A DNA stretch of 63,235 bases, filler included, from Octopus bimaculoides (lineage: Eukaryota): the NCBI RefSeq assembly GCF_001194135.2. It is 9 parts of 8 records of this genome, joined end to end, with 100 filler letters (N's around TTAATTAATTAA, not from the genome) between each part and the next. Parts side by side here need not be neighbours in the genome. Positions count along the whole stretch, not along the records: positions 33,937 to 41,073 come from NW_026346321.1; 8 more parts are not named here. The stretch is one strand, 5' to 3'. The notes under the pieces were generated by a model. It saw nothing but the letters and a program-made list of their open reading frames with translations, was not told where the DNA came from and did not search any database. The translations under genes were made by a program, and so were the position numbers. This document shows, one piece after another, positions 33,937-41,173 of the stretch. Position 1 is the first letter of the stretch; each line of letters starts with the position of its first letter.

Positions 33937-34028
33937 CTCCGGCTGCGAGGACTCCAAGTGGTCCGGTCTTGACAGCGTTGCCGATGTAAGTCATGTGTTT
34001 TTGCTATGGCATCTAATTCGTTTCTTGG
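33937..34028 (-). pseudogene. Second parvovirus-like VP1u (PLA2) fragment with a 47-bp internal deletion
   Basis: 92 bp identical to 39623-39761 minus 39673-39719; begins at the edge of an assembly gap. Confidence 0.95.
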
Positions 34029-35490
34029 GCCGTTCAGCTTGGACTCAGTCACAACGCATATATCTATCTTTCACGACCTGAGGTCGTCTAGGAGGTATGT
34101 CTGCCTCCATTTGGACCTCAGGCCACGTACATTTATACACCCTATCTTAACTTCCATGAAAAAATATTTACTTTACCTTTGCAGGAGGGGTTTCACGACT
34201 TCCACCGTCCCCTCCTCCGGTATCTTCTATGACTGGTGTAGCCGTTGGTTTTAAAATAATCTTTTCTTTTACTATATGCTGACTCACATCGAAAATATTG
34301 TCAGAATATCTCTGTTTAAATTGTTCGAAGTGTTCTGCACTTATCCTCGCCAACCATATGTGCGGCGGTTTACCTTCAATAGGTCCCATTACCGTATAGT
34401 TTTTTTGTTATTAATCCATGTAACACTTCATTTTTGATGGTGTACGACACAATTCTTTCTTGCGGGGGTTTAGGAGCGGGTTTCAATTTGAGAGTGGACG
34501 AGGGTATTATTTTTTGTGTGTTTTGCATTTTTTCTTTTTTTTCTTGTAGGGGGAGGGGAGTCTGGTCCAATAGGTTTTTTCCTTTTATTTTTAACAACTT
34601 TAAACTCCGCTTCTTCCTCACTTTTTCCTTTTTCTATTATGACTTCCGGCATTTTCGATTTACCTTGTTTGACATCTTTTTTAGGTTCTGTTTTCTCCGG
34701 TATTTCTTTCTCCCTTTGGGGAGGGACTTCTTTTTTTTTGGTTAGGTTTTTTTATTTTCACACATTTGGAACGCACGTGGCCCTTTTCACCACATTTAAA
34801 ACATCTGGGCCTCCGTCCCTCCACCGACACCCTTGCACTGAGACCCTCCCCTATAAAAATCCTGTCTGGTCTGGTCTAGAGGGTATCGTTTGACGCTAGA
34901 ACTACAAGCTCAAGCGCCTGCCCCTTCCAATTGAGTGCGTTCCTTCTTCTCATTGTAAGTACATCCACCTGATCCTCCACGTCGTAAATTAACGCTTGTA
35001 CTAACCAGTTTACGTCATACCCGGATGGAATATCTTCTATTGTGATTTTCGCAGTTCTCCGGCCAAGGTATGTAGGTAAGAGCATTACCTCTTCAGTTTT
35101 CATCGTTTGTGTCGATACTTCTTTCGCTACTTCAGCCGATTCGAATTGGGCCTCTACTGTAGCATTTCGAGGCCCTCTACCAACATATTTTATTTTTTCC
35201 CACACAGGGGCAAGACACTTTTCTATTGCATCCATTTTCATCATCATGACGCGCCTTTCCTTGCAGTTGTATACTTTGTAAATAACGGTTCTTACCGCCA
35301 ATTCTTGGATAGTTTCCTTTGGCGGTATTAACCTTGTTACATCGTCAGTTTTCTTTATCAGGTGTCTATATTTGTACCACTGTTCGGGTATCACTTCCAT
35401 TACTTCAAATTGCCCGCCTACGGCGGATGAAAAGCTACTGACCTTTCTCGTTTCCTCGGTTACTTCGGGGTTTACTTGAAATACATGCAT
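34029..35490 (-). mobile_element. Tx1/L1-type LINE: ORF1 (zinc knuckle) plus the first ~43 codons of ORF2 (APE endonuclease)
   Basis: Reading through the stop at 34876-78 gives ...RVSVEGRRPRCFKCGEKGHVRSKC (CCHC at 34762-34803); frameshifts in poly-A runs; ORF2 ATG at 34157 gives MEVKIGCINVRGLRSKWRQTYLLDDLRS*KID, the APE N-terminal NVRGL motif. Confidence 0.85.
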
Positions 35491-35494
35491 ATTA

Positions 35495-35766
35495 TCTATA
35501 TATATAAAAATGAGAATGTCTGTCTGTCTGTCTGTCTGTGTGAATCCCTAAAACTCGAGAACTACGCAACCAATTTCATTCAAATTTTACACATGCCTTA
35601 CTTAGGGTTCCAGTTGCGTTTTAGTCAAAAAAAATTTTAACTTCTTCCAGAGTTCGAGCCCACAGCAACATATCTCCTCCACTATTTAAGTATTACGTGT
35701 CAAAAGTGAAACAAAAACACTCATGTCAAATACTTTCACTTTAAAAATGAAACTATCCTGCTAACT
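35495..35766 (+). mobile_element. Helitron-type 5' terminus
   Basis: A|TCTATATATATAAAAATGAGAAT(GTCT)n...aaaactcgagaactacgcaaccaatttcattcaaattttac: A|TC start, (GTCT)n tract and subterminal motif typical of non-autonomous Helitrons; runs into an N gap at 35767. Confidence 0.7.
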
Positions 35767-36151
35767 NNNNNNNNNNNNNNNNNNNNNNNNNNNNNNNNNN
35801 NNNNNNNNNNNNNGAGAGAGAGATGTATACATATAGATGTATATGTACACGTTATTCCACTGAAACAATCACATTTCGATACTTTCAGAGAGAGAGAAAG
35901 AGATGTATATGTACACGTATATGCATAGATATAGATCTATATGCATACATGTATATGTATACACATGTGTAGATGTATATATATATAGATGTACATGTAA
36001 TATGTACATATATATACATGCATACAGATATCTATACATATATACACCCATCACACACAAACACATGCACACAAACCCACACATTAGTCATTTGTTTTCT
36101 TATCCAAAACTACGTCAAAAGTACTGAACGGATCTTTATGAAATTTGGAAA

Positions 36152-37669
36152 TTATATTCTATGTATAACGGCCATAACTCCCATGTATAATGTAGATGTT
36201 TTTGGTGGATTTTCAGAAACGAATGTTTTGTTGTATGTGTTTGTGACGTATTTTTTTATGAAATCTTTCCATATAGTTATCCACATCAGTGGGTTCAATT
36301 CCACTCTTCCCCATTCTTTAAGTTGGGGCATAGGCGCTCTTGTTTCGAACAAGTATAGCCTGTTTTTCAGGGCGTCCTCGTCTTGCATTACTACTCTCCA
36401 TGGCGGTGTGTTACTTGTTGATATTGATGGTGTTCTTTTGAGAATACGTTCGTTTTGGTGCTTAATGTTAATATAAGTTTGAGTTCCTTCTAAAATGCAC
36501 TTAGCTTCCTCAATGTTGTTGGTGGTGAACCACATCTCGTCGGTATAGATAAGAGTTTTGTCTATACATGATCCGAATGTGAAATTGTCACTGGCTTGAC
36601 ATCGCATTCTTCCGCAGTTCATTAAACCGTTGCGAATTGATCTAAGAATGTAGCTTTTTCCGGAGTTGCTGACGCCTGTGATGTGTAATCCGTTAACTTT
36701 TGGATTAATTTTATGGCAAATGTCAAACGTTTGTTGTCCGAATGATTGTGGGTCGATGTTATGGTGTTTTAACCATTCTTCGTATATGTTTAATGATGTC
36801 TGTATATCATGGTAATTGTTCATATTATTCATGAAAAGTGTTTTCTTGTCGTTAATTTGCTGCCATATGGGTGTGCTGAGAGTTTCGATATTTGTTTCAG
36901 TAGCTGCTGCTGATATTATCGTTTGAATGTTAGCCGTGTTCCTGTAAATGTTGGACCATGTTGTTCTGTGAGACAGTTTAGGGGAGTTATTACAGTAGTG
37001 TATTATATCTCCTAGGTCTGTGCTGTTACACTGCCTCATCATCTTTTTGATAAAGTTATATTTATCGCCTCTGACTGTTTTGGTTCTGTTAATAGATTCT
37101 GCTTCGGATATGTCGTCATCAGTATTATCGTAGTTTTTATCCGTTAGCTTTTGAAGTAAAGCTGTTTGTTGTTCTGAGTTTATGTTGTTAGCACATACTA
37201 CCCATCTCAATGAATCGTCTTGTGTTAAATATTTGCAAAATCCATATGGTGTAAATACTTTCATGGCTGCCATGTCGTATGGTTTGGCGATGTTATTCCT
37301 CAATATATTTTTAAGCATTTGAAAGCTGTGTTGATTAGACGGATGTTCCTTATGAAAAGATATGACGTGAAAGTGTTTCTTGTCGTGACAGTGTTTAATT
37401 GTACTCATAGCCTCTTTATGGTAGACGACAATAGATGGATGTTTTGAAATAATATTCATAAAGTACTGTGCCTGTGGTGACTGCGTGTATTTGATGGTCT
37501 CCATGGCTTTTCGTATTGTGGGAGATTCATCCCATGTAAATTCATTGTCGTCATTCCACCTATATACCCAAGTATATGGTAGGAGGCTCGATTCTTTGAT
37601 GAAGTTGTCGAACGATTGTTTGCTAGCGTACACGTCTGCCGATGTTGAAGGCTCCATCGCTGGCTGCAT
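36152..37669 (-). CDS. NS1: Parvovirus-like NS1 replication initiator (HUH endonuclease + SF3 helicase), 505 aa from ATG 37669 (alternative ATG 37657)
   Basis: HUH KHFHVISF (HFH at 37367-37375), motif III FCKYLTQ, Walker A GVSNSGKS (36653-36676), Walker B LIYTDE, B' EAKCILEG...INIKHQ, motif C ISTSN; no internal stops. Confidence 0.95.
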   Translation of the reverse strand: MQPAMEPSTSADVYASKQSFDNFIKESSLLPYTWVYRWNDDNEFTWDESPTIRKAMETIKYTQSPQAQYFMNIISKHPSIVVYHKEAMSTIKHCHDKKHFHVISFHKEHPSNQHSFQMLKNILRNNIAKPYDMAAMKVFTPYGFCKYLTQDDSLRWVVCANNINSEQQTALLQKLTDKNYDNTDDDISEAESINRTKTVRGDKYNFIKKMMRQCNSTDLGDIIHYCNNSPKLSHRTTWSNIYRNTANIQTIISAAATETNIETLSTPIWQQINDKKTLFMNNMNNYHDIQTSLNIYEEWLKHHNIDPQSFGQQTFDICHKINPKVNGLHITGVSNSGKSYILRSIRNGLMNCGRMRCQASDNFTFGSCIDKTLIYTDEMWFTTNNIEEAKCILEGTQTYINIKHQNERILKRTPSISTSNTPPWRVVMQDEDALKNRLYLFETRAPMPQLKEWGRVELNPLMWITIWKDFIKKYVTNTYNKTFVSENPPKTSTLYMGVMAVIHRI

Positions 37670-37723
37670 TGTGTCGTTGGTTGTCGAATTGTTTCTATTT
37701 ATCGTGTTATTTCCCGCCCAGCG

Positions 37724-37730
37724 ATTTATA
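37724..37730 (-). promoter_or_regulatory. Candidate TATA box for NS1
   Basis: TATAAAT on - strand, 17 nt after the VP stop codon and about 55 nt before the first NS1 ATG. Confidence 0.45.
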
Positions 37731-37746
37731 ATCACTGTCGCTTGTT

Positions 37747-39872
37747 TTAACGGTTCACAAAGTGTCCTGACAGATGTTTCAGAACTTTATTTCCGCTTGC
37801 GTCCTTATCTATAAATGTTGTTCTACCATGCCGTTTCCCTTTCGGCGGTATGTAATTCAAGTGCCTACCAGGGGGCGTGGCTAAAAACAGGTCGTAGTTG
37901 AAGTCTTTGTAGGTGGACTGTTGTGCTACTTGTGTGCATATTGTTGATACTTTCTGTGGGTGGTGCATAGCCTCGAAGTAGCATTCAATTTCTAGGAAAT
38001 ACGTCACATCGAAAGTGAAGTATAGCTGAGCTGCTGTTCCATTGGGTCTAGATGCTGCTGGTACGTTTATGTAAACAAGTTGAGGCGGGTCTTCGGAAGT
38101 GTATAGTACTTTGTTAATGAGCGTTCTATTGGCTGTAACCATGCTGCCGCTGCTGATTCCTCTTGTTCCGTCCTCTTTTTGAATTGGTTGTTGGTGGTCG
38201 TAGTTTATGTCAGAAATTTCTGTGTAGTTTAGGTCTTCTTTTTTGTGTGGTCTCTTTCGTTTTCTAGTTTCACCGAAGCTTTCGTGGTTTTCTTTGCCTT
38301 CTACTCCAAGTTCAGGTGCTGTGGTGACGTCAAGACATCCATCCCATGTGTAGTTGAATCCGAGTTGTGTTTCATCGTTGACAGAGCTCCCGTAGTTTAA
38401 GATGCAGCCATGCCTTGTGTATGTGTCGTTAAGGCTTGTATTCGTTAGTGGTACTCGAAGTTGTGATGGGTTATCCCATTTGTGGCTGTAAACATCTCCT
38501 TGTCTTACTTTTTGGACGTTCGGCATTTCTCTCCAGTCGTGGAATCTAATGATTTTTGATGTGCATGACTGTGTGTCTGCGCTGATTCCGCATTCGCTTA
38601 ATTGATTGACGTAAGCTGTCGGTGCGCAATATGCGAATTTGTATTTCGGTAGTTCCATATTCATGAACTGTTCTGGTTGTATCAATGAGAATCCCATGTT
38701 CGGAACTTTGGTAATTGTTTTCAGGTTGCCGTGTCCTACGTATGTGCCGTTGTCAACCCATATTTCGAAGTAAGGCAGGGGGCTTGGTAGGAATACCTCC
38801 TCGTTATTTCTTGATGTCCATTCGCCACCTATGACGTCAGAGATTTCGAAACCAACAGATTTAATGCGATATGATGTTGCGGTTTTGATTGTCTGTTCAA
38901 ACTGAATGGGATTGACCCATGATGTTAGCCAGTATGGTATGATGTAGTCTTCTGCATTTACAATGCCGTACGCGCTGTGTCCGACATCATGGTAACCTTT
39001 TTCACTGCCTTGAAATTTAGTGAAGTTTACTGTTGCTTGATTCATTTGAGTTGTTTTAACTCCATGTCTGAATCGTCGTTTGAAGCACACATCTCCACTG
39101 AAATTGCCGGTTGCCTCTGGGATCGTTGCTCCTCTGACTTGGTTTCCTGCCCAGCCTGTTGCTGCGCCTGCTGCGCCCTCGTTGCTTGTAGATGCTTCAG
39201 CCATTTTCTTAAGATCGACAACGTACTGAGAATGAGTAACGCTATCACTATTCCCGCTGTTGCCTCTGAATTTTTGATCAAGTCCACAATAATGTTTAAG
39301 ACTAATTGCTCCGGCTGCGAGGACTCCAAGTGGTCCGGTCTTGACAGCGTTGCCGATGAATTGCTTGTCTGATTCCCAGGTGTCCTTNNNNNNNNNNAGC
39401 ACACATCTCCGCTGAAATTGCCGGTTGCCTCTGGGATCGTTGCTCCTCTGACTTGGTTTCCTGCCCAGCCTGTTGCTGCGCCTGCTGCGCCCTCGTTGCT
39501 TGTAGATGCTTCAGCCATTTTCTTAAGATCGACAACGTACTGAGAATGAGTAACGCTATCACTATTCCCGCTGTTGCCTCTGAATTTTTGATCAAGTCCA
39601 CAATAATGTTTAAGACTAATTGCTCCGGCTGCGAGGACTCCAAGTGGTCCGGTCTTGACAGCGTTGCCGATGAATTGCTTGTCTGATTCCCAGGTGTCCT
39701 TCGTAGGATCCTCGTAATGTAAGTCATGTGTTTTTGCTATGGCATCTAATTCGTTTCTTGGTACTTGGTAGCGTCTTTTTTCTAGGTCTGTTCCTGGTCC
39801 TAAGAAATCGTGGCCTGGGACGTGCAGTTCTGATGTTTTTTTCTCTTTAGGACGTTTCTTTGGTGGCGGCAT
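37747..39872 (-). CDS. VP1: Parvovirus-like capsid protein VP1 with PLA2 domain; 603 aa after collapsing a 304-bp assembly overlap; probable VP2 start at Met119 (485 aa)
   Basis: N-terminal NLS MPPPKKRPKEKK, Ca-loop HDFLGPG, catalytic DAIAKTHDLHY, Gly/Ala-rich MAEASTSNEGAAGAATG, jelly-roll-like IIPYW...F....SYRIKSVGFEI; 2126-314=1812 nt keeps the frame. Confidence 0.92.
39042..39727 (-). CDS. Overlapping +1-frame accessory ORF, 123 aa after collapse, one predicted transmembrane segment
   Basis: ATG at 39727 is 145 nt into VP1; hydrophobic ATAGIVIALLILSTLSIL followed by RKWLK and a Q-rich polar tail. Confidence 0.55.
39084..39701. repeat. 304-bp direct duplication across a 10-N gap (probable unmerged contig overlap)
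   Basis: 39084-39387 equals 39398-39701 except one A/G difference (ctccactg vs ctccgctg). Confidence 0.9.
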
Positions 39873-39879
39873 AACACGG

Positions 39880-39930
39880 ACTGATTTAAAGTTGTTTTCT
39901 GTGTATTTATATGCAGGTAGTCATGTGACA
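39880..39930 (-). promoter_or_regulatory. Core promoter of VP: TATA + Inr + E-box
   Basis: On - strand: gtcacatgac (E-box-like), TATAAATA (39911-39904), TCAGT initiator (39884-39880) with its A 29 nt from the TATA start, and ATG at 39872. Confidence 0.7.
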
Positions 39931-40251
39931 TATTTCGTCATCTGTGTTACTTTTCATACACACCAGCGCTGGCAGGACGTATAAATTAGACGGGGCACCT
40001 CTTTCTCCAGCGGCATCGCTGTCTCTGAGGAGTTCTGACTCCTCCTTCCTAGTCAATTAAATTAAATTTTTGATGTTGATGAAATTTTAACCCGAACATA
40101 ACAGATGAGCATTATTTGTAATTCAACGGTACAACAGTGTAAGACTACCCTTTCAGATATACTTTCATTGTGATTTCTGCAATGTGGTGCATAAATTGTC
40201 AAGTAAATGAGACGCATCTTTGCCTCCACTGATTCACTTGCAAAGTGTTAA

Positions 40252-40524
40252 GTAAAATTATTTTGTTGCAGACCTCCTTTGGGTCTTTTTATTATCACTA
40301 CGACACACATAGTCCCCAGTTGGTAACATTGATTTCAAGTCCCTCCTAGATGAGAGACTGGCATTCCACTTAATGTCTATGTTCCATGCTGGCATGGATT
40401 GGAGAGTTATTAATGTAGAAATATGGTATCGTAGCTACTAACAGTTGAGGGTTGCGTAGTCTAGACGGCGTTTTTAGATTTCATTATTCTCTTTAACCCG
40501 GGCAAAGCCGGGTATTTCTGCTAG
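40252..40524 (+). mobile_element. Helitron-type 3' terminus
   Basis: Hairpin acccgg-gcaaag-ccgggt (40496-40513), 7-nt spacer, CTAG (40521-40524), then T. Confidence 0.8.
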
Positions 40525-41173
40525 TCAAAAATAATTTCTTCTTGTAAAAGAGGGAAGTCCTCGTCACACAATAAAAATGCCATTTCGTTATCCATATTGA
40601 AATAAAATTTTTCTTTCACACAATAGTAGTTTGCTATCTCTCTAAAAGAGAGCAGCAAAAGAGAAAATTTTTGCCCCGCAGGGCGCAAATCGACAGGAAC
40701 AACAGTTGAAATTCGACAAAAATCACATTAAACAGCAACAAAAATCACATTAAACAGCAACAAAAAGGACAGAAACAACTCATTAAATTAGGTAGAAGCA
40801 ATCCGAAGTAGCACGACGAGACTGAAGTAGCTTGACCAGCTGGTTGAAGAAGTCTGTCTAGCCCTGGCAAACATATATAATCAGAGTGAAATTTATTCAC
40901 TGGTTACCAAAATATGAAATATCATATTTCTGAATCTCTCAGAGAGAGTTAAGCAGAAGCGAAGACACTCTTGAATTGTGCACTGAGCACTTCACTTATC
41001 CCTGTGGGATCTGCAGTCAGTGAGCCATAGCAGTCTCTTTTGCAAATCTATAGAAAGCCTTGGGGTTTGTTTTNNNNNNNNNNNNNNNNNNNNNNNNNNN
41101 NNNNNNNNNNNNNNNNNTTAATTAATTAANNNNNNNNNNNNNNNNNNNNNNNNNNNNNNNNNNNNNNNNNNNN

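What the first reader, a model, noticed from the sequence alone, without database searches (positions are those of the whole stretch)
36152..39872. Endogenous parvovirus-like element with reversed gene order (VP upstream of NS1, same strand)
Monosense parvoviruses place NS 5' of VP and ambisense densoviruses place them on opposite strands. Here VP1 (39872 to 37747) precedes NS1 (37669 to 36152) on one strand with a 77-nt spacer. A head-to-tail concatemer of a normal linear genome would leave terminal hairpins in that spacer, and none is visible. So the source was either a lineage with native VP-NS order or a circular or circularly permuted genome, possibly an undescribed parvovirus-related group infecting cephalopods.
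Basis: partly seen in the sequence, partly recalled or inferred. Interest (0 to 1): 0.95.

Follow-up and report, generated by a model that had tools for sequence, protein, structure and literature searches.

The report
Octopus-genome parvovirus copy, capsid gene first
A parvovirus-derived insertion in an octopus-like genome has its capsid gene ahead of its replication gene on one strand, and about 15 related sequences from unrelated public samples share this order, so it appears native to a virus lineage, unlike the replication-gene-first order of classified single-strand-coding parvoviruses.

Summary
On the minus strand, VP1 (39872 to 37747, N-terminal phospholipase A2 domain) is followed after 77 nt by NS1 (37669 to 36152, HUH motif plus SF3 helicase). 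Both lie on one gap-free stretch.

The 10-N gap in VP1 is flanked by the same ~304 nt (one mismatch) in the same codon phase. It looks like an uncollapsed contig overlap, not missing sequence.

The viral DNA is integrated. It splits a LINE retrotransposon that is contiguous in Octopus bimaculoides, and a second, truncated VP fragment is fused to the LINE endonuclease region at the left edge.

The order recurs:
- Nine close relatives on SRA-derived contigs and one O. bimaculoides gene model show VP then NS1.
- Eight of the nine contigs from a more distant ~4-kb group (NS1 ~28% identical) show it too. Their upstream ORFs match solved parvoviral capsids, and terminal hairpin or inverted-repeat signs lie outside the VP-NS1 block. 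The ninth, L022, is a rearranged multimer of the same unit.

Synonymous sites are saturated while both genes are conserved. A TATA box sits about 50-64 nt before the NS1 start in most spacers. The best reading is a native capsid-first parvovirus lineage. I found no published description of this order.

The parts
37747..39872 (-). VP1 gene (capsid protein with N-terminal PLA2 domain). Contains the 10-N assembly gap and the duplicated segment around it. No stops or frameshifts on either side of the gap.
   Evidence: ORFs. Four full-length homologues of 606-621 aa at 41-43% identity. hhalign against the capsid-like proteins of the ~4-kb group gives prob 77%, E=2.1e-5 over 324 columns. Those proteins match solved parvoviral capsids 6wh3, 3n7x and 9nek.
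39696..39830 (-). Phospholipase A2-like domain of the VP1 unique region (FLGPG calcium-loop motif and HDxxY catalytic motif).
   Evidence: Pfam PF08398, E=8.9e-9, residues 15-59. Motifs are conserved in the alignment.
39042..39727 (-). Overlapping ORF in the +1 frame of the VP1 N-terminal region. Encodes a small protein with one strongly hydrophobic segment followed by basic residues. Candidate accessory membrane protein.
   Evidence: Open at the same place in the window and in L004, L005, L006 and L009, although VP is only 41-43% identical.
39905..39911 (-). TATA box 39 nt upstream of the VP1 ATG, preceded by TGACG-type motifs. Inferred VP promoter.
   Evidence: A TATA box lies at a similar distance in L006, and TGACG motifs are present in L004, L005 and L006.
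37670..37746 (-). VP1-NS1 intergenic spacer, 77 nt, holding a TATA box at 37724-37730, 61 nt before the NS1 ATG. Inferred NS1 promoter. No palindrome or hairpin.
   Evidence: TATA boxes lie 49-64 nt before the NS1 ATG in L001, L004 and L006, with a variant in L002.
36152..37669 (-). NS1 gene (replication initiator): N-terminal HUH-type nuclease motifs and an SF3 helicase. No internal stops or frameshifts. One 3' truncation relative to the longest relatives.
   Evidence: Pfam PF01057, E=1.6e-17. PDB AAV Rep40/68, E=2e-9. Alignment A2 shows the conserved HxHxxxxH motif, Walker A GxxxxGKS, Walker B and motif C, and the missing C-terminal module.
36302..36907 (-). SF3 helicase domain of NS1.
   Evidence: Pfam match to residues 277-478 of the 527-aa open frame. 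PDB matches to residues 316-465.
39873..40534 (-). 662 nt between the LINE 5' part and the VP1 ATG. Origin is mixed or unknown: promoter-proximal viral sequence plus at least one short host-type repeat. No terminal hairpin.
   Evidence: DNA fold z=-2.1 with no dominant hairpin. A 37-nt match to O. bimaculoides at 40367-40403.
40535..40959 (-). 5' region of a host LINE retrotransposon (left half of the interrupted copy).
   Evidence: Aligns with O. bimaculoides L010 15393-15707 and 9655-9781. In both places that segment lies directly upstream of a LINE ORF1.
34026..35490 (-). The same LINE, right half. It holds ORF1 (the 204-aa ORF plus a CCHC zinc knuckle, degraded) and runs into the start of the ORF2 endonuclease.
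   Evidence: 75% identity over 1469 nt with L010 15722-17173, which in octopus lies 14 nt after the left half. ORF204 is 49-68% identical to O. bimaculoides proteins. L010 carries zf-CCHC, Exo_endo_phos and zf-RVT domains.
33937..34028 (-). Second VP1 fragment, fused to the LINE endonuclease region. It is 5'-truncated, has one internal deletion, and is cut by the edge of the piece.
   Evidence: 100% identical to two segments of the VP1 N-terminal region.
35814..36151 (-). Sequence directly after the NS1 stop: about 70 nt, then a TG/TA-rich microsatellite. It is followed by the 47-N gap at 35767-35813. Not a viral telomere.
   Evidence: It folds (z=-4.7) only because the TA/CATG repeats are self-complementary. 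It has no similarity to the regions downstream of NS1 in relatives.

Best explanation
The window holds a recently integrated, incomplete copy of a parvovirus whose native genome order is capsid gene first, then replication gene, on the same strand.

Shown:
- The copy sits inside an octopus-type LINE retrotransposon.
- It keeps an open VP1 (PLA2 domain plus capsid body) and an open NS1 (HUH nuclease motifs plus SF3 helicase).
- It lacks the C-terminal part of NS1 and any terminal hairpins.

Inferred for the source virus:
- A linear single-stranded DNA genome of about 4.5-5 kb, with telomeres lying outside the VP-NS1 block.
- A left-end TATA promoter with TGACG motifs that drives VP1 and an overlapping small membrane-protein ORF.
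- A second TATA promoter in the short VP-NS1 spacer that drives NS1.
- A full-length NS1 ending in a basic patch and a Cys/His module.

As it stands the copy is most likely an inert or merely transcribed genomic fossil.

The same capsid-first layout is shared by a more distant group of ~4-kb parvo-like genomes found in metagenomes. The permutation is therefore old and belongs to a lineage, not to this locus.
For: Gene identities.

Adjacency on one gap-free stretch.

Recurrence in close relatives:
- L001-L009, from at least four separate groups of sequencing runs, all have VP directly upstream of NS1 on the same strand. VP is 41-43% and NS1 49-69% identical to the window.
- The O. bimaculoides gene model P0012 carries a VP C-terminus-like stretch followed by an NS1-like stretch.

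Recurrence in the distant group (NS1 ~28% identical, E=1e-41 to 1e-30):
- L012/L013, L014/L020, L015/L016, L021 and L023 all read capsid, then NS1.
- Their upstream ORFs match solved parvoviral capsids: 6wh3 at E=5e-8, 3n7x at E=3e-5, 9nek at E=5e-4.
- They align with the window's VP family by hhalign at E=2.1e-5.

Termini lie outside the block:
- A perfect 34-bp-stem hairpin sits at the very end of L013, downstream of NS1 (z=-12.8).
- An 18-nt inverted match links the start of L012 to that hairpin, and L020 has an 11-nt terminal inverted repeat.
- A CCCTAC..GTAGGG mini-hairpin lies on both sides of the coding block of L014.

Selection: synonymous differences are saturated (pS 0.69-0.94) while non-synonymous differences are 0.11-0.40. 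dN/dS is 0.05-0.15 where it can be measured, for both genes.

Promoters: TATA boxes lie 49-64 nt before the NS1 ATG in the window, L001, L004 and L006, with a variant in L002.

Integration: the LINE is split by about 5.06 kb that holds the viral genes.
Against: - No termini were recovered for the cephalopod-type clade, in the window or in L004, L005 and L009. Linear topology for that clade is extrapolated from the distant group.
- The terminal repeats seen in the distant group are short (11-18 nt) apart from the single L013 hairpin.
- The capsid fold of VP was not shown. Two AlphaFold runs failed (pLDDT 30 and 28), and VP has no direct Pfam or PDB capsid match. The combined profile reaches 3n7x only at E=0.086.
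- The hosts of the SRA runs are unknown, so some relatives could be orthologous or paralogous host copies and not independent viruses.
- Several relatives are visibly decayed.
- The promoter and transcript model is inference from motifs only.
Confidence: 0.8

Rival explanations
1. The source genome is circular, or is packaged as a circular permutation, so that 'VP before NS1' is only one way of opening a circle. The long non-coding stretch between the NS1 end and the VP start would be an origin region and not two telomeres.
For: No hairpins or inverted terminal repeats were found in the window or in the close relatives L004, L005 and L009. L022 shows a head-to-tail junction of two units, which a rolling-circle or tandem form could produce.
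Against: No contig has matching ends, as assemblies of circles usually do. In the distant group a strong terminal hairpin ends contig L013 and short inverted repeats lie at contig ends. NS1 is of the parvoviral type, best matching AAV Rep, and no circular member of that type is known to me (own knowledge).
Confidence: 0.1
2. All capsid-first loci descend from one ancient integration of a head-to-tail multimer of a normal NS-VP genome whose terminal junction was deleted. The unit then spread or was inherited in host genomes.
For: Parvoviral DNA can integrate as head-to-tail multimers (own knowledge). L022 shows that rearranged multimers of this group exist. Several relatives are decayed copies, and one run (ERR3431203) holds two divergent copies, L003 and L004.
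Against: Both genes stayed open and conserved while synonymous sites saturated, which is not expected of neutral host DNA. The spacer carries a positionally conserved TATA box. The order also holds in ~4-kb contigs from metagenomes, with terminal structures outside the block. No relative with NS-VP order was found at any distance examined.
Confidence: 0.06
3. The upstream ~600-aa ORF is not the capsid but a PLA2-bearing accessory protein, as in the megaparvovirus-like lineage. The true capsid gene would lie downstream of NS1 and is simply missing from these short contigs.
For: A published lineage has a PLA2 cassette 5' of NS1 with VP 3' of it (PMC13426907). VP here has no direct Pfam or PDB capsid hit, and its fold could not be predicted.
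Against: Relatives carry 540-825 nt after NS1 with no long ORF. The PLA2 domain is fused to a body that aligns over 324 columns with proteins matching solved parvoviral capsids. In the distant group those capsid genes are themselves upstream of NS1, and NS1 is followed by a terminal hairpin.
Confidence: 0.04
4. The adjacency, or the apparent integration, is an assembly artefact: virus reads mis-joined to host contigs.
For: The piece has two N gaps, an uncollapsed 304-nt overlap, and a second VP fragment that could have attracted a wrong scaffold join.
Against: VP body, spacer and NS1 are on one gap-free stretch. Two independent gap-free stretches each contain a direct host-virus junction: LINE 5' part to the VP upstream region, and LINE endonuclease region to the VP fragment. 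The same gene order is assembled independently in more than 15 other contigs.
Confidence: 0.02

Closest known systems
Penstylhamaparvovirus (PstDV/IHHNV) and Brevihamaparvovirus-type shrimp and mosquito parvoviruses; Penaeus monodon metallodensovirus
   Same: Monosense genomes of about 4 kb from invertebrates. The capsids of the distant capsid-first group match the solved PstDV (3n7x) and PmMDV (6wh3) capsids. A small ORF overlaps the NS1 N-terminal region, as NS2 does in those viruses (the NS2 comparison is from my own knowledge).
   Different: In those viruses NS is 5' and VP is 3' (own knowledge). Here VP is 5'. The cephalopod-type VP also carries a PLA2 domain, which PstDV, HPV and PmMDV lack (PMC11357303).
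Dependoparvovirus (AAV) and other Parvovirinae
   Same: NS1 helicase is closest to AAV Rep40/68 among solved structures. VP1 has an N-terminal PLA2 domain followed by a Gly/Ala-rich linker. An alternative-frame small membrane-protein ORF lies in the VP N-terminal region, reminiscent of MAAP or SAT (the comparison is from my own knowledge).
   Different: Rep/NS is 5' of cap, flanked by ITRs. Hosts are vertebrates. NS1 identity is low and confined to the helicase.
Megaparvovirus-like lineage (SwaBA-MePV-1 and beetle EVEs; PMC13426907)
   Same: The nearest published atypical layout I found. A PLA2-bearing cassette lies 5' of NS1 on the same strand, and near-complete endogenous copies occur in invertebrate genomes.
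   Different: There the PLA2 protein is separate, VP (without PLA2) is still 3' of NS1, and the coding region is about 6.4 kb with four large ORFs. Here PLA2 is fused to the capsid body and nothing long follows NS1.
Mollusc parvovirus-related sequences of Francois et al. 2016 (PMC5013282)
   Same: Parvovirus-like sequences from marine molluscs that resemble Parvovirinae more than Densovirinae and branch outside all known genera. This agrees with what NS1 shows here.
   Different: Those were partial NS or VP fragments. Gene order was not described in the passages I read. I could not test whether they are the same clade.
Ambisense densoviruses (Densovirinae)
   Same: Invertebrate hosts, VP1 with PLA2, separate promoters for the NS and VP cassettes.
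   Different: The cassettes are on opposite strands, transcribed inward from ITRs. Here both are on one strand. Inversion of the NS cassette of such a genome would give the present order; that is speculation, not tested.

Membership tests
Parvoviridae | NS1 with an SF3 helicase domain | tested here: met
   Pfam PF01057, E=1.6e-17. AAV Rep40/68 chains, E=2e-9. Walker A, B and C motifs are invariant in alignment A2.
Parvoviridae | NS1 N-terminal HUH endonuclease motifs (HuHuuu and an active-site Tyr) | tested here: met
   H-x-H-hydrophobic motif (HFHVISFH / HYHMITWH) and a downstream conserved Tyr motif in A2. This rests on motifs only; there is no profile or structure match for this domain.
Parvoviridae | Capsid protein with an eight-stranded jelly roll forming T=1 particles | tested here: inconclusive
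   No direct Pfam or PDB capsid hit. AlphaFold failed twice. There is indirect homology: hhalign E=2.1e-5 to proteins that match capsids 6wh3, 3n7x and 9nek, and the joint profile hits 3n7x at E=0.086.
Parvoviridae | PLA2 domain in the VP1 unique region (present in most, not all, members) | tested here: met
   PF08398, E=8.9e-9, with GPG and HDxxY motifs conserved. Absent from the distant ~4-kb group.
Parvoviridae | Linear ssDNA genome of 4-6 kb ending in hairpin telomeres | tested here: not met
   No hairpins or ITRs in the window or the close relatives, as is common for endogenous copies and short-read contigs. In the distant group a terminal hairpin (L013) and short terminal inverted repeats were seen. 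Strandedness is not testable from sequence.
Parvoviridae | NS cassette 5' of the VP cassette in monosense members (universal in classified taxa as far as I know; not a formal criterion) | tested here: not met
   VP is 5' of NS1 in the window and in every relative read, apart from the rearranged multimer L022.
Endogenous parvoviral element (EPV/EVE) | Virus-derived sequence physically continuous with host chromosomal DNA | tested here: met
   The viral block splits an octopus-type LINE whose halves are contiguous in O. bimaculoides. A LINE endonuclease-to-VP fusion lies at the left edge.
Endogenous parvoviral element (EPV/EVE) | Germline fixation or orthologous presence in related species | not testable with these tools
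   No cephalopod genome collection is searchable here. Only one O. bimaculoides gene model with the same order was seen.
Established subfamilies (Parvovirinae, Densovirinae, Hamavirinae, Penbrevirinae, Hepanvirinae, Metallovirinae) | Placement in an NS1/SF3 phylogeny with the ICTV reference set and identity thresholds | not tested
   No named reference NS1 set could be drawn from the tools. The nearest named hits are a bird-metagenome 'Parvoviridae sp.' NS protein and a bivalve (Mactra antiquata) hypothetical protein, at 30-35% identity over the helicase.
Megaparvovirus-like layout | Separate PLA2 protein and hypothetical protein 5' of NS1, with VP 3' of NS1 | tested here: not met
   PLA2 is fused to the capsid-like body. 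There is no long ORF in the 540-825 nt after NS1 in L004 and L005.
Circular Rep-encoding ssDNA viruses | Circular genome (contig ends overlap) and a CRESS-type Rep | tested here: not met
   No end overlap in any of nine contigs. NS1 is of the parvoviral type.

The most novel reading that the evidence does not exclude
A whole, so far undescribed branch of parvoviruses has a genome permuted relative to every classified member, with the capsid cassette at the 5' end and the replication cassette at the 3' end of one coding strand, and with telomeres outside that block. The branch would comprise a PLA2-bearing lineage that has repeatedly entered cephalopod genomes and a ~4-kb lineage with PstDV-like capsids seen in metagenomes. 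It would probably merit a taxon at subfamily level.
Probability: 0.55. Interest if true: 0.8.

Novelty: new variant of a known kind. Interest (0 to 1): 0.74.

Why it matters
In every classified monosense parvovirus known to me, the replication gene sits at the left and the capsid gene at the right. Models of their timed expression, in which NS1 is made first and then switches on the capsid promoter, rest on that layout. A lineage that has kept the opposite order under purifying selection, with its own promoter in the short spacer, shows the layout is not a constraint of the family and gives a natural comparison for how expression is ordered.

It also matters in practice:
- Virus-discovery and EVE pipelines that expect NS then VP may mis-orient, split or discard such genomes.
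- The contigs found here are unnamed in the databases searched.
- The octopus insertion adds cephalopods to the hosts with near-complete parvoviral insertions and offers a dated marker if orthologous copies exist.

Tried and rejected
- **Structure prediction of VP.** I ran it on the 5-sequence alignment and on a version trimmed to the capsid body. Mean pLDDT was 30 and 28, so no fold search was run.
- **Direct sequence and profile searches of VP against Pfam and PDB.** No capsid hit.
- **Scans of IMG/VR and JGI metagenomes for the cephalopod-type NS1.** No relatives, with either the single protein or the alignment.
- **IMG/VR scan with the distant-group NS1 alignment.** It gave only three ~8-kb contigs with weak SF3 matches (L017-L019). 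I judged them unrelated and did not examine them.
- **Circularity and ITR checks.** Negative for the close relatives.
- **Hairpin search in the window flanks.** Nothing upstream. The downstream fold is a property of a TA/TG microsatellite.
- **The 204-aa ORF as a viral accessory gene.** Rejected. It is absent from all relatives and belongs to an octopus LINE.
- **Literature search for the SRA run numbers.** None found, so the hosts of L001-L009 remain unknown.
- **Literature searches for cephalopod parvoviruses or a reversed gene order.** Nothing relevant. The 'unusual genome organization' of tongue-sole parvovirus is an extra 3' ORF, not a reversal.
- **A 6660-aa hit in the representative search.** It is a cadherin-like repeat protein and spurious.
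- **Named reference NS1 sequences.** None could be drawn from the tools, so no family-wide tree was made.

Full report
**1. What is in the sequence**

Two long ORFs follow each other on the minus strand of the piece (33937-41073).
- The first starts at ATG 39872 and stops at 37749-37747.
- The second is open from 37735, has its first ATG at 37669, and stops at 36154-36152.

The second ORF is a parvoviral NS1.
- It matches Pfam Parvo_NS1 at E=1.6e-17 and the AAV Rep40/Rep68 helicase chains at E=2e-9.
- Aligned with ten relatives, it shows a conserved HxH-hydrophobic nuclease motif, a conserved Tyr motif, and invariant Walker A, Walker B and motif C.

The first ORF starts with a parvoviral PLA2-like domain (PF08398, E=8.9e-9). 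A Gly/Ala-rich linker and a ~450-residue body follow. The body has no direct Pfam or PDB match.

**2. The assembly gap**

- The sequence on the two sides of the 39388-39397 gap is one ~304-nt segment present twice, with a single mismatch. On the upstream side it runs right up to the N run.
- Both copies are read in the same codon phase of the VP frame.
- Relatives have that segment once.

The simplest reading is two overlapping contig ends, perhaps two haplotypes, that a scaffolder set side by side. Nothing is missing, and there is no stop or frameshift on either side. The non-redundant length, about 603 codons, fits the 606-621 of relatives. I did not build a merged sequence.

The VP body, the spacer, NS1 and 338 nt beyond it are one gap-free stretch. 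A second gap of 47 N lies at 35767-35813.

**3. It is integrated in host DNA**

The 204-aa ORF downstream of NS1 (35490 to 34876), a CCHC knuckle and the Lys-rich fragments after it have no counterpart in any viral relative. They are 49-68% identical to Octopus bimaculoides sequences.

In an O. bimaculoides locus (L010, CM046605.1) the matching element is a LINE. It has ORF1 with a zinc knuckle, then ORF2 with an APE-type endonuclease and an RT-associated zinc domain.
- Window 34026-35478 aligns with L010 15722-17173 at 75% identity over 1469 nt.
- Window 40535-40851 aligns with L010 15393-15707.
- In octopus those two segments are 14 nt apart. In the window they are 5,056 nt apart, and the VP-NS1 block lies between them.

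So the viral DNA sits inside one LINE copy, just upstream of its ORF1.

At the left edge the LINE endonuclease region is fused directly to a second VP fragment (33937-34028). That fragment is 5'-truncated, has one internal deletion, and is cut by the edge of the piece.

How the two viral pieces relate cannot be told from this piece. They could be one complex event with captured host DNA or two separate events.

**4. State of the window copy**

- VP1 has no stops or frameshifts. It has the assembly duplication only.
- NS1 has no internal stops or frameshifts, but one truncation at the 3' end. The longest relatives continue with a basic patch and a conserved Cys/His module, which is absent here.
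- No terminal hairpin or inverted terminal repeat is present. The 662 nt upstream of VP folds no better than expected for a telomere (z=-2.1). The sequence after NS1 is a TG/TA microsatellite whose fold comes from its self-complementary repeat units.

**5. The order recurs in close relatives**

Searching 5.8 billion proteins gave 11 NS1 relatives at 50-69% identity and 4 full-length VP relatives at 41-43% identity. All came from assemblies of public sequencing runs. Every contig that could be read has VP directly upstream of NS1 on the same strand:

| Locus | Run | VP | NS1 |
|---|---|---|---|
| L004 | ERR3431203 | 621 aa | 530 aa |
| L005 | ERR14857108 | 608 aa | 517 aa |
| L006-L008 | ERR12921338/40/41 | 611 aa | at least 565 aa |
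| L009 | ERR12921337 | 606 aa | start region missing |
| L001 | SRR11869386 | 3' end, one frameshift | 514 aa |
| L002 | SRR8281675 | 3' end | 568 aa |
| L003 | ERR3431203 | six stops and one frameshift | one frameshift |

The O. bimaculoides gene model P0012 contains a VP C-terminus-like stretch followed by an NS1-like stretch.

Spacers in the loci where both flanking genes read through are 37-186 nt, too short for two telomeres. A TATA box lies 49-64 nt before the NS1 ATG in the window (37724-37730), L001, L004 and L006, with a variant in L002. VP has a TATA box 34-39 nt before its ATG in the window (39905-39911) and in L006, with TGACG-type motifs upstream.

**6. Selection**

Between these lineages synonymous differences are saturated (pS 0.69-0.94). 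Non-synonymous differences are 0.11-0.40 for both genes. Where dS can be estimated, dN/dS is 0.05-0.15. Both genes therefore diverged while functional and while keeping this order. That fits a replicating virus entering genomes repeatedly. It does not fit one rearranged insertion drifting in host DNA.

**7. The order also holds in a more distant group**

An exhaustive profile-free search found 1,131 NS1 relatives. The next-nearest full-length ones are about 28% identical (E=1e-41 to 1e-30). They sit on 3.4-4.2-kb contigs from unrelated metagenomes and runs. In all of the following the layout is a 430-450-aa ORF, then a small overlapping ORF, then NS1, all on one strand:
- L012/L013
- L014/L020 (JACSEF/JACSEC)
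- L015/L016
- L021 (Ga0210322)
- L023 (JACSEB)

The upstream ORFs match solved parvoviral capsids directly: PmMDV 6wh3 at E=5e-8, PstDV 3n7x at E=3e-5, and 9nek at E=5e-4. They also match Pfam IHHNV_capsid.

A profile-profile comparison aligns the window's VP family with them over 324 columns (probability 77%, E=2.1e-5). The shared motifs include the strand that carries the PDB matches. A joint profile's only PDB hit is 3n7x (E=0.086). This is the evidence that the window's VP body is a parvoviral capsid protein. Two structure predictions failed (pLDDT 30 and 28).

**8. Where the genome ends lie**

- L013 ends, 390 nt after NS1, in a perfect 34-bp-stem hairpin (z=-12.8).
- The start of L012, the same virus, matches 18 nt of that hairpin in inverted orientation.
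- L020 has an 11-nt inverted repeat at its two extreme ends.
- L014 has a CCCTAC..GTAGGG mini-hairpin on both sides of the coding block, and the same motif is in the L013 hairpin.
- No contig has overlapping ends.
- L022 reads part of NS1, then part of VP, then the NS N-terminal ORF. That is a head-to-tail junction with an internal deletion of a capsid-first unit.

Together this places the termini outside the VP-NS1 block in a linear genome for the distant group. For the cephalopod-type clade the topology is unproven.

**9. Explanation and rivals**

Best reading (0.8): a native capsid-first parvovirus lineage, of which the window holds a recent, incomplete, integrated copy.

Rivals:
- A circular or permuted genome (0.10).
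- One ancient rearranged insertion that spread in hosts (0.06).
- The upstream ORF as a PLA2 accessory protein with the true capsid elsewhere, as in the published megaparvovirus-like layout (0.04).
- An assembly artefact (0.02).

The evidence for and against each is in the structured fields.

**10. Comparison with what is known**

- Mollusc parvovirus-like fragments closer to Parvovirinae and outside known genera were reported in 2016 (PMC5013282), but not their gene order.
- The family now has six subfamilies (PMC13426907). The nearest published unusual layout places a separate PLA2 cassette before NS1 but keeps VP after it.
- Nine literature searches found no description of a capsid-first order or of cephalopod parvoviruses.
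- The library lacks most subscription journals, so prior description cannot be excluded.

I rate this a new variant of a known kind.

Noticed in passing
window 39042-39727 (minus strand); L004, L005, L006 and L009 at the same place in VP: An ORF in the +1 frame of the VP1 N-terminal region is open in all five divergent lineages. It is 75-125 aa, with one strongly hydrophobic ~17-aa segment followed by basic residues. It is a candidate small membrane protein, like the alternative-frame SAT or MAAP proteins of other parvoviruses.
   Followed up: partly
L001, L003, L005, L009 versus L002, L006 and P0007 (just after or at the end of NS1); absent from window 36152 onward: A conserved C-terminal NS1 module (basic patch, then a D-x-EQ-x-GQ-x-C..H..P...C motif) is in frame in three relatives. 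In four others it lies in a different frame after an A-rich tract. This is either indels in decaying copies or a programmed frame change or splice. The window copy and L004 lack it.
   Followed up: partly
window 33937-34028: A second VP1 fragment is fused to the start of the LINE endonuclease domain. It is 100% identical to the main copy where it aligns. What follows it lies outside the piece, so a second viral unit may be present.
   Followed up: partly
window 35767-35813: A second assembly gap (47 N), not mentioned in the finding, lies inside a TG/TA microsatellite between NS1 and the LINE ORF1. Linkage of the two sides therefore rests on scaffolding, plus the fact that the two LINE halves fit together.
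   Followed up: yes
L022 (JACSEB010000851.1): A contig of the distant group reads NS1 (first ~390 residues), then VP (last ~280 residues), then the NS N-terminal ORF. This is a head-to-tail junction of two capsid-first units with an internal deletion, as in defective or integrated multimers.
   Followed up: partly
window VP1 body; alignment A1 columns ~450-465: An invariant basic cluster (RKR-x-R) followed by an acidic stretch lies in the middle of the capsid body in all five VP sequences. It looks like a nuclear localisation signal in an unusual position.
   Followed up: no
window 41030-41073 and 40716-40759 (minus strand): The far upstream flank reads like the linker region of a LINE ORF2 (NPKAFYRF-type motif). 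It lies upstream of what looks like a LINE 5' region, so two LINE copies may abut. A perfect 22-nt tandem duplication lies in the LINE 5' region.
   Followed up: no
L014 93-109 and 3855-3871; L013 3080-3099: A CCCTAC-loop-GTAGGG mini-hairpin is shared by two viruses of the distant group about 50% identical in NS1 and VP, at or near both genome ends. It may be a conserved origin or NS1-binding element. It is absent from the window.
   Followed up: partly
P0057: A hypothetical protein on a 27-Mb contig of the bivalve Mactra antiquata matches the NS1 helicase at 35% identity. It is probably another mollusc endogenous parvoviral element. Its gene order was not examined.
   Followed up: no
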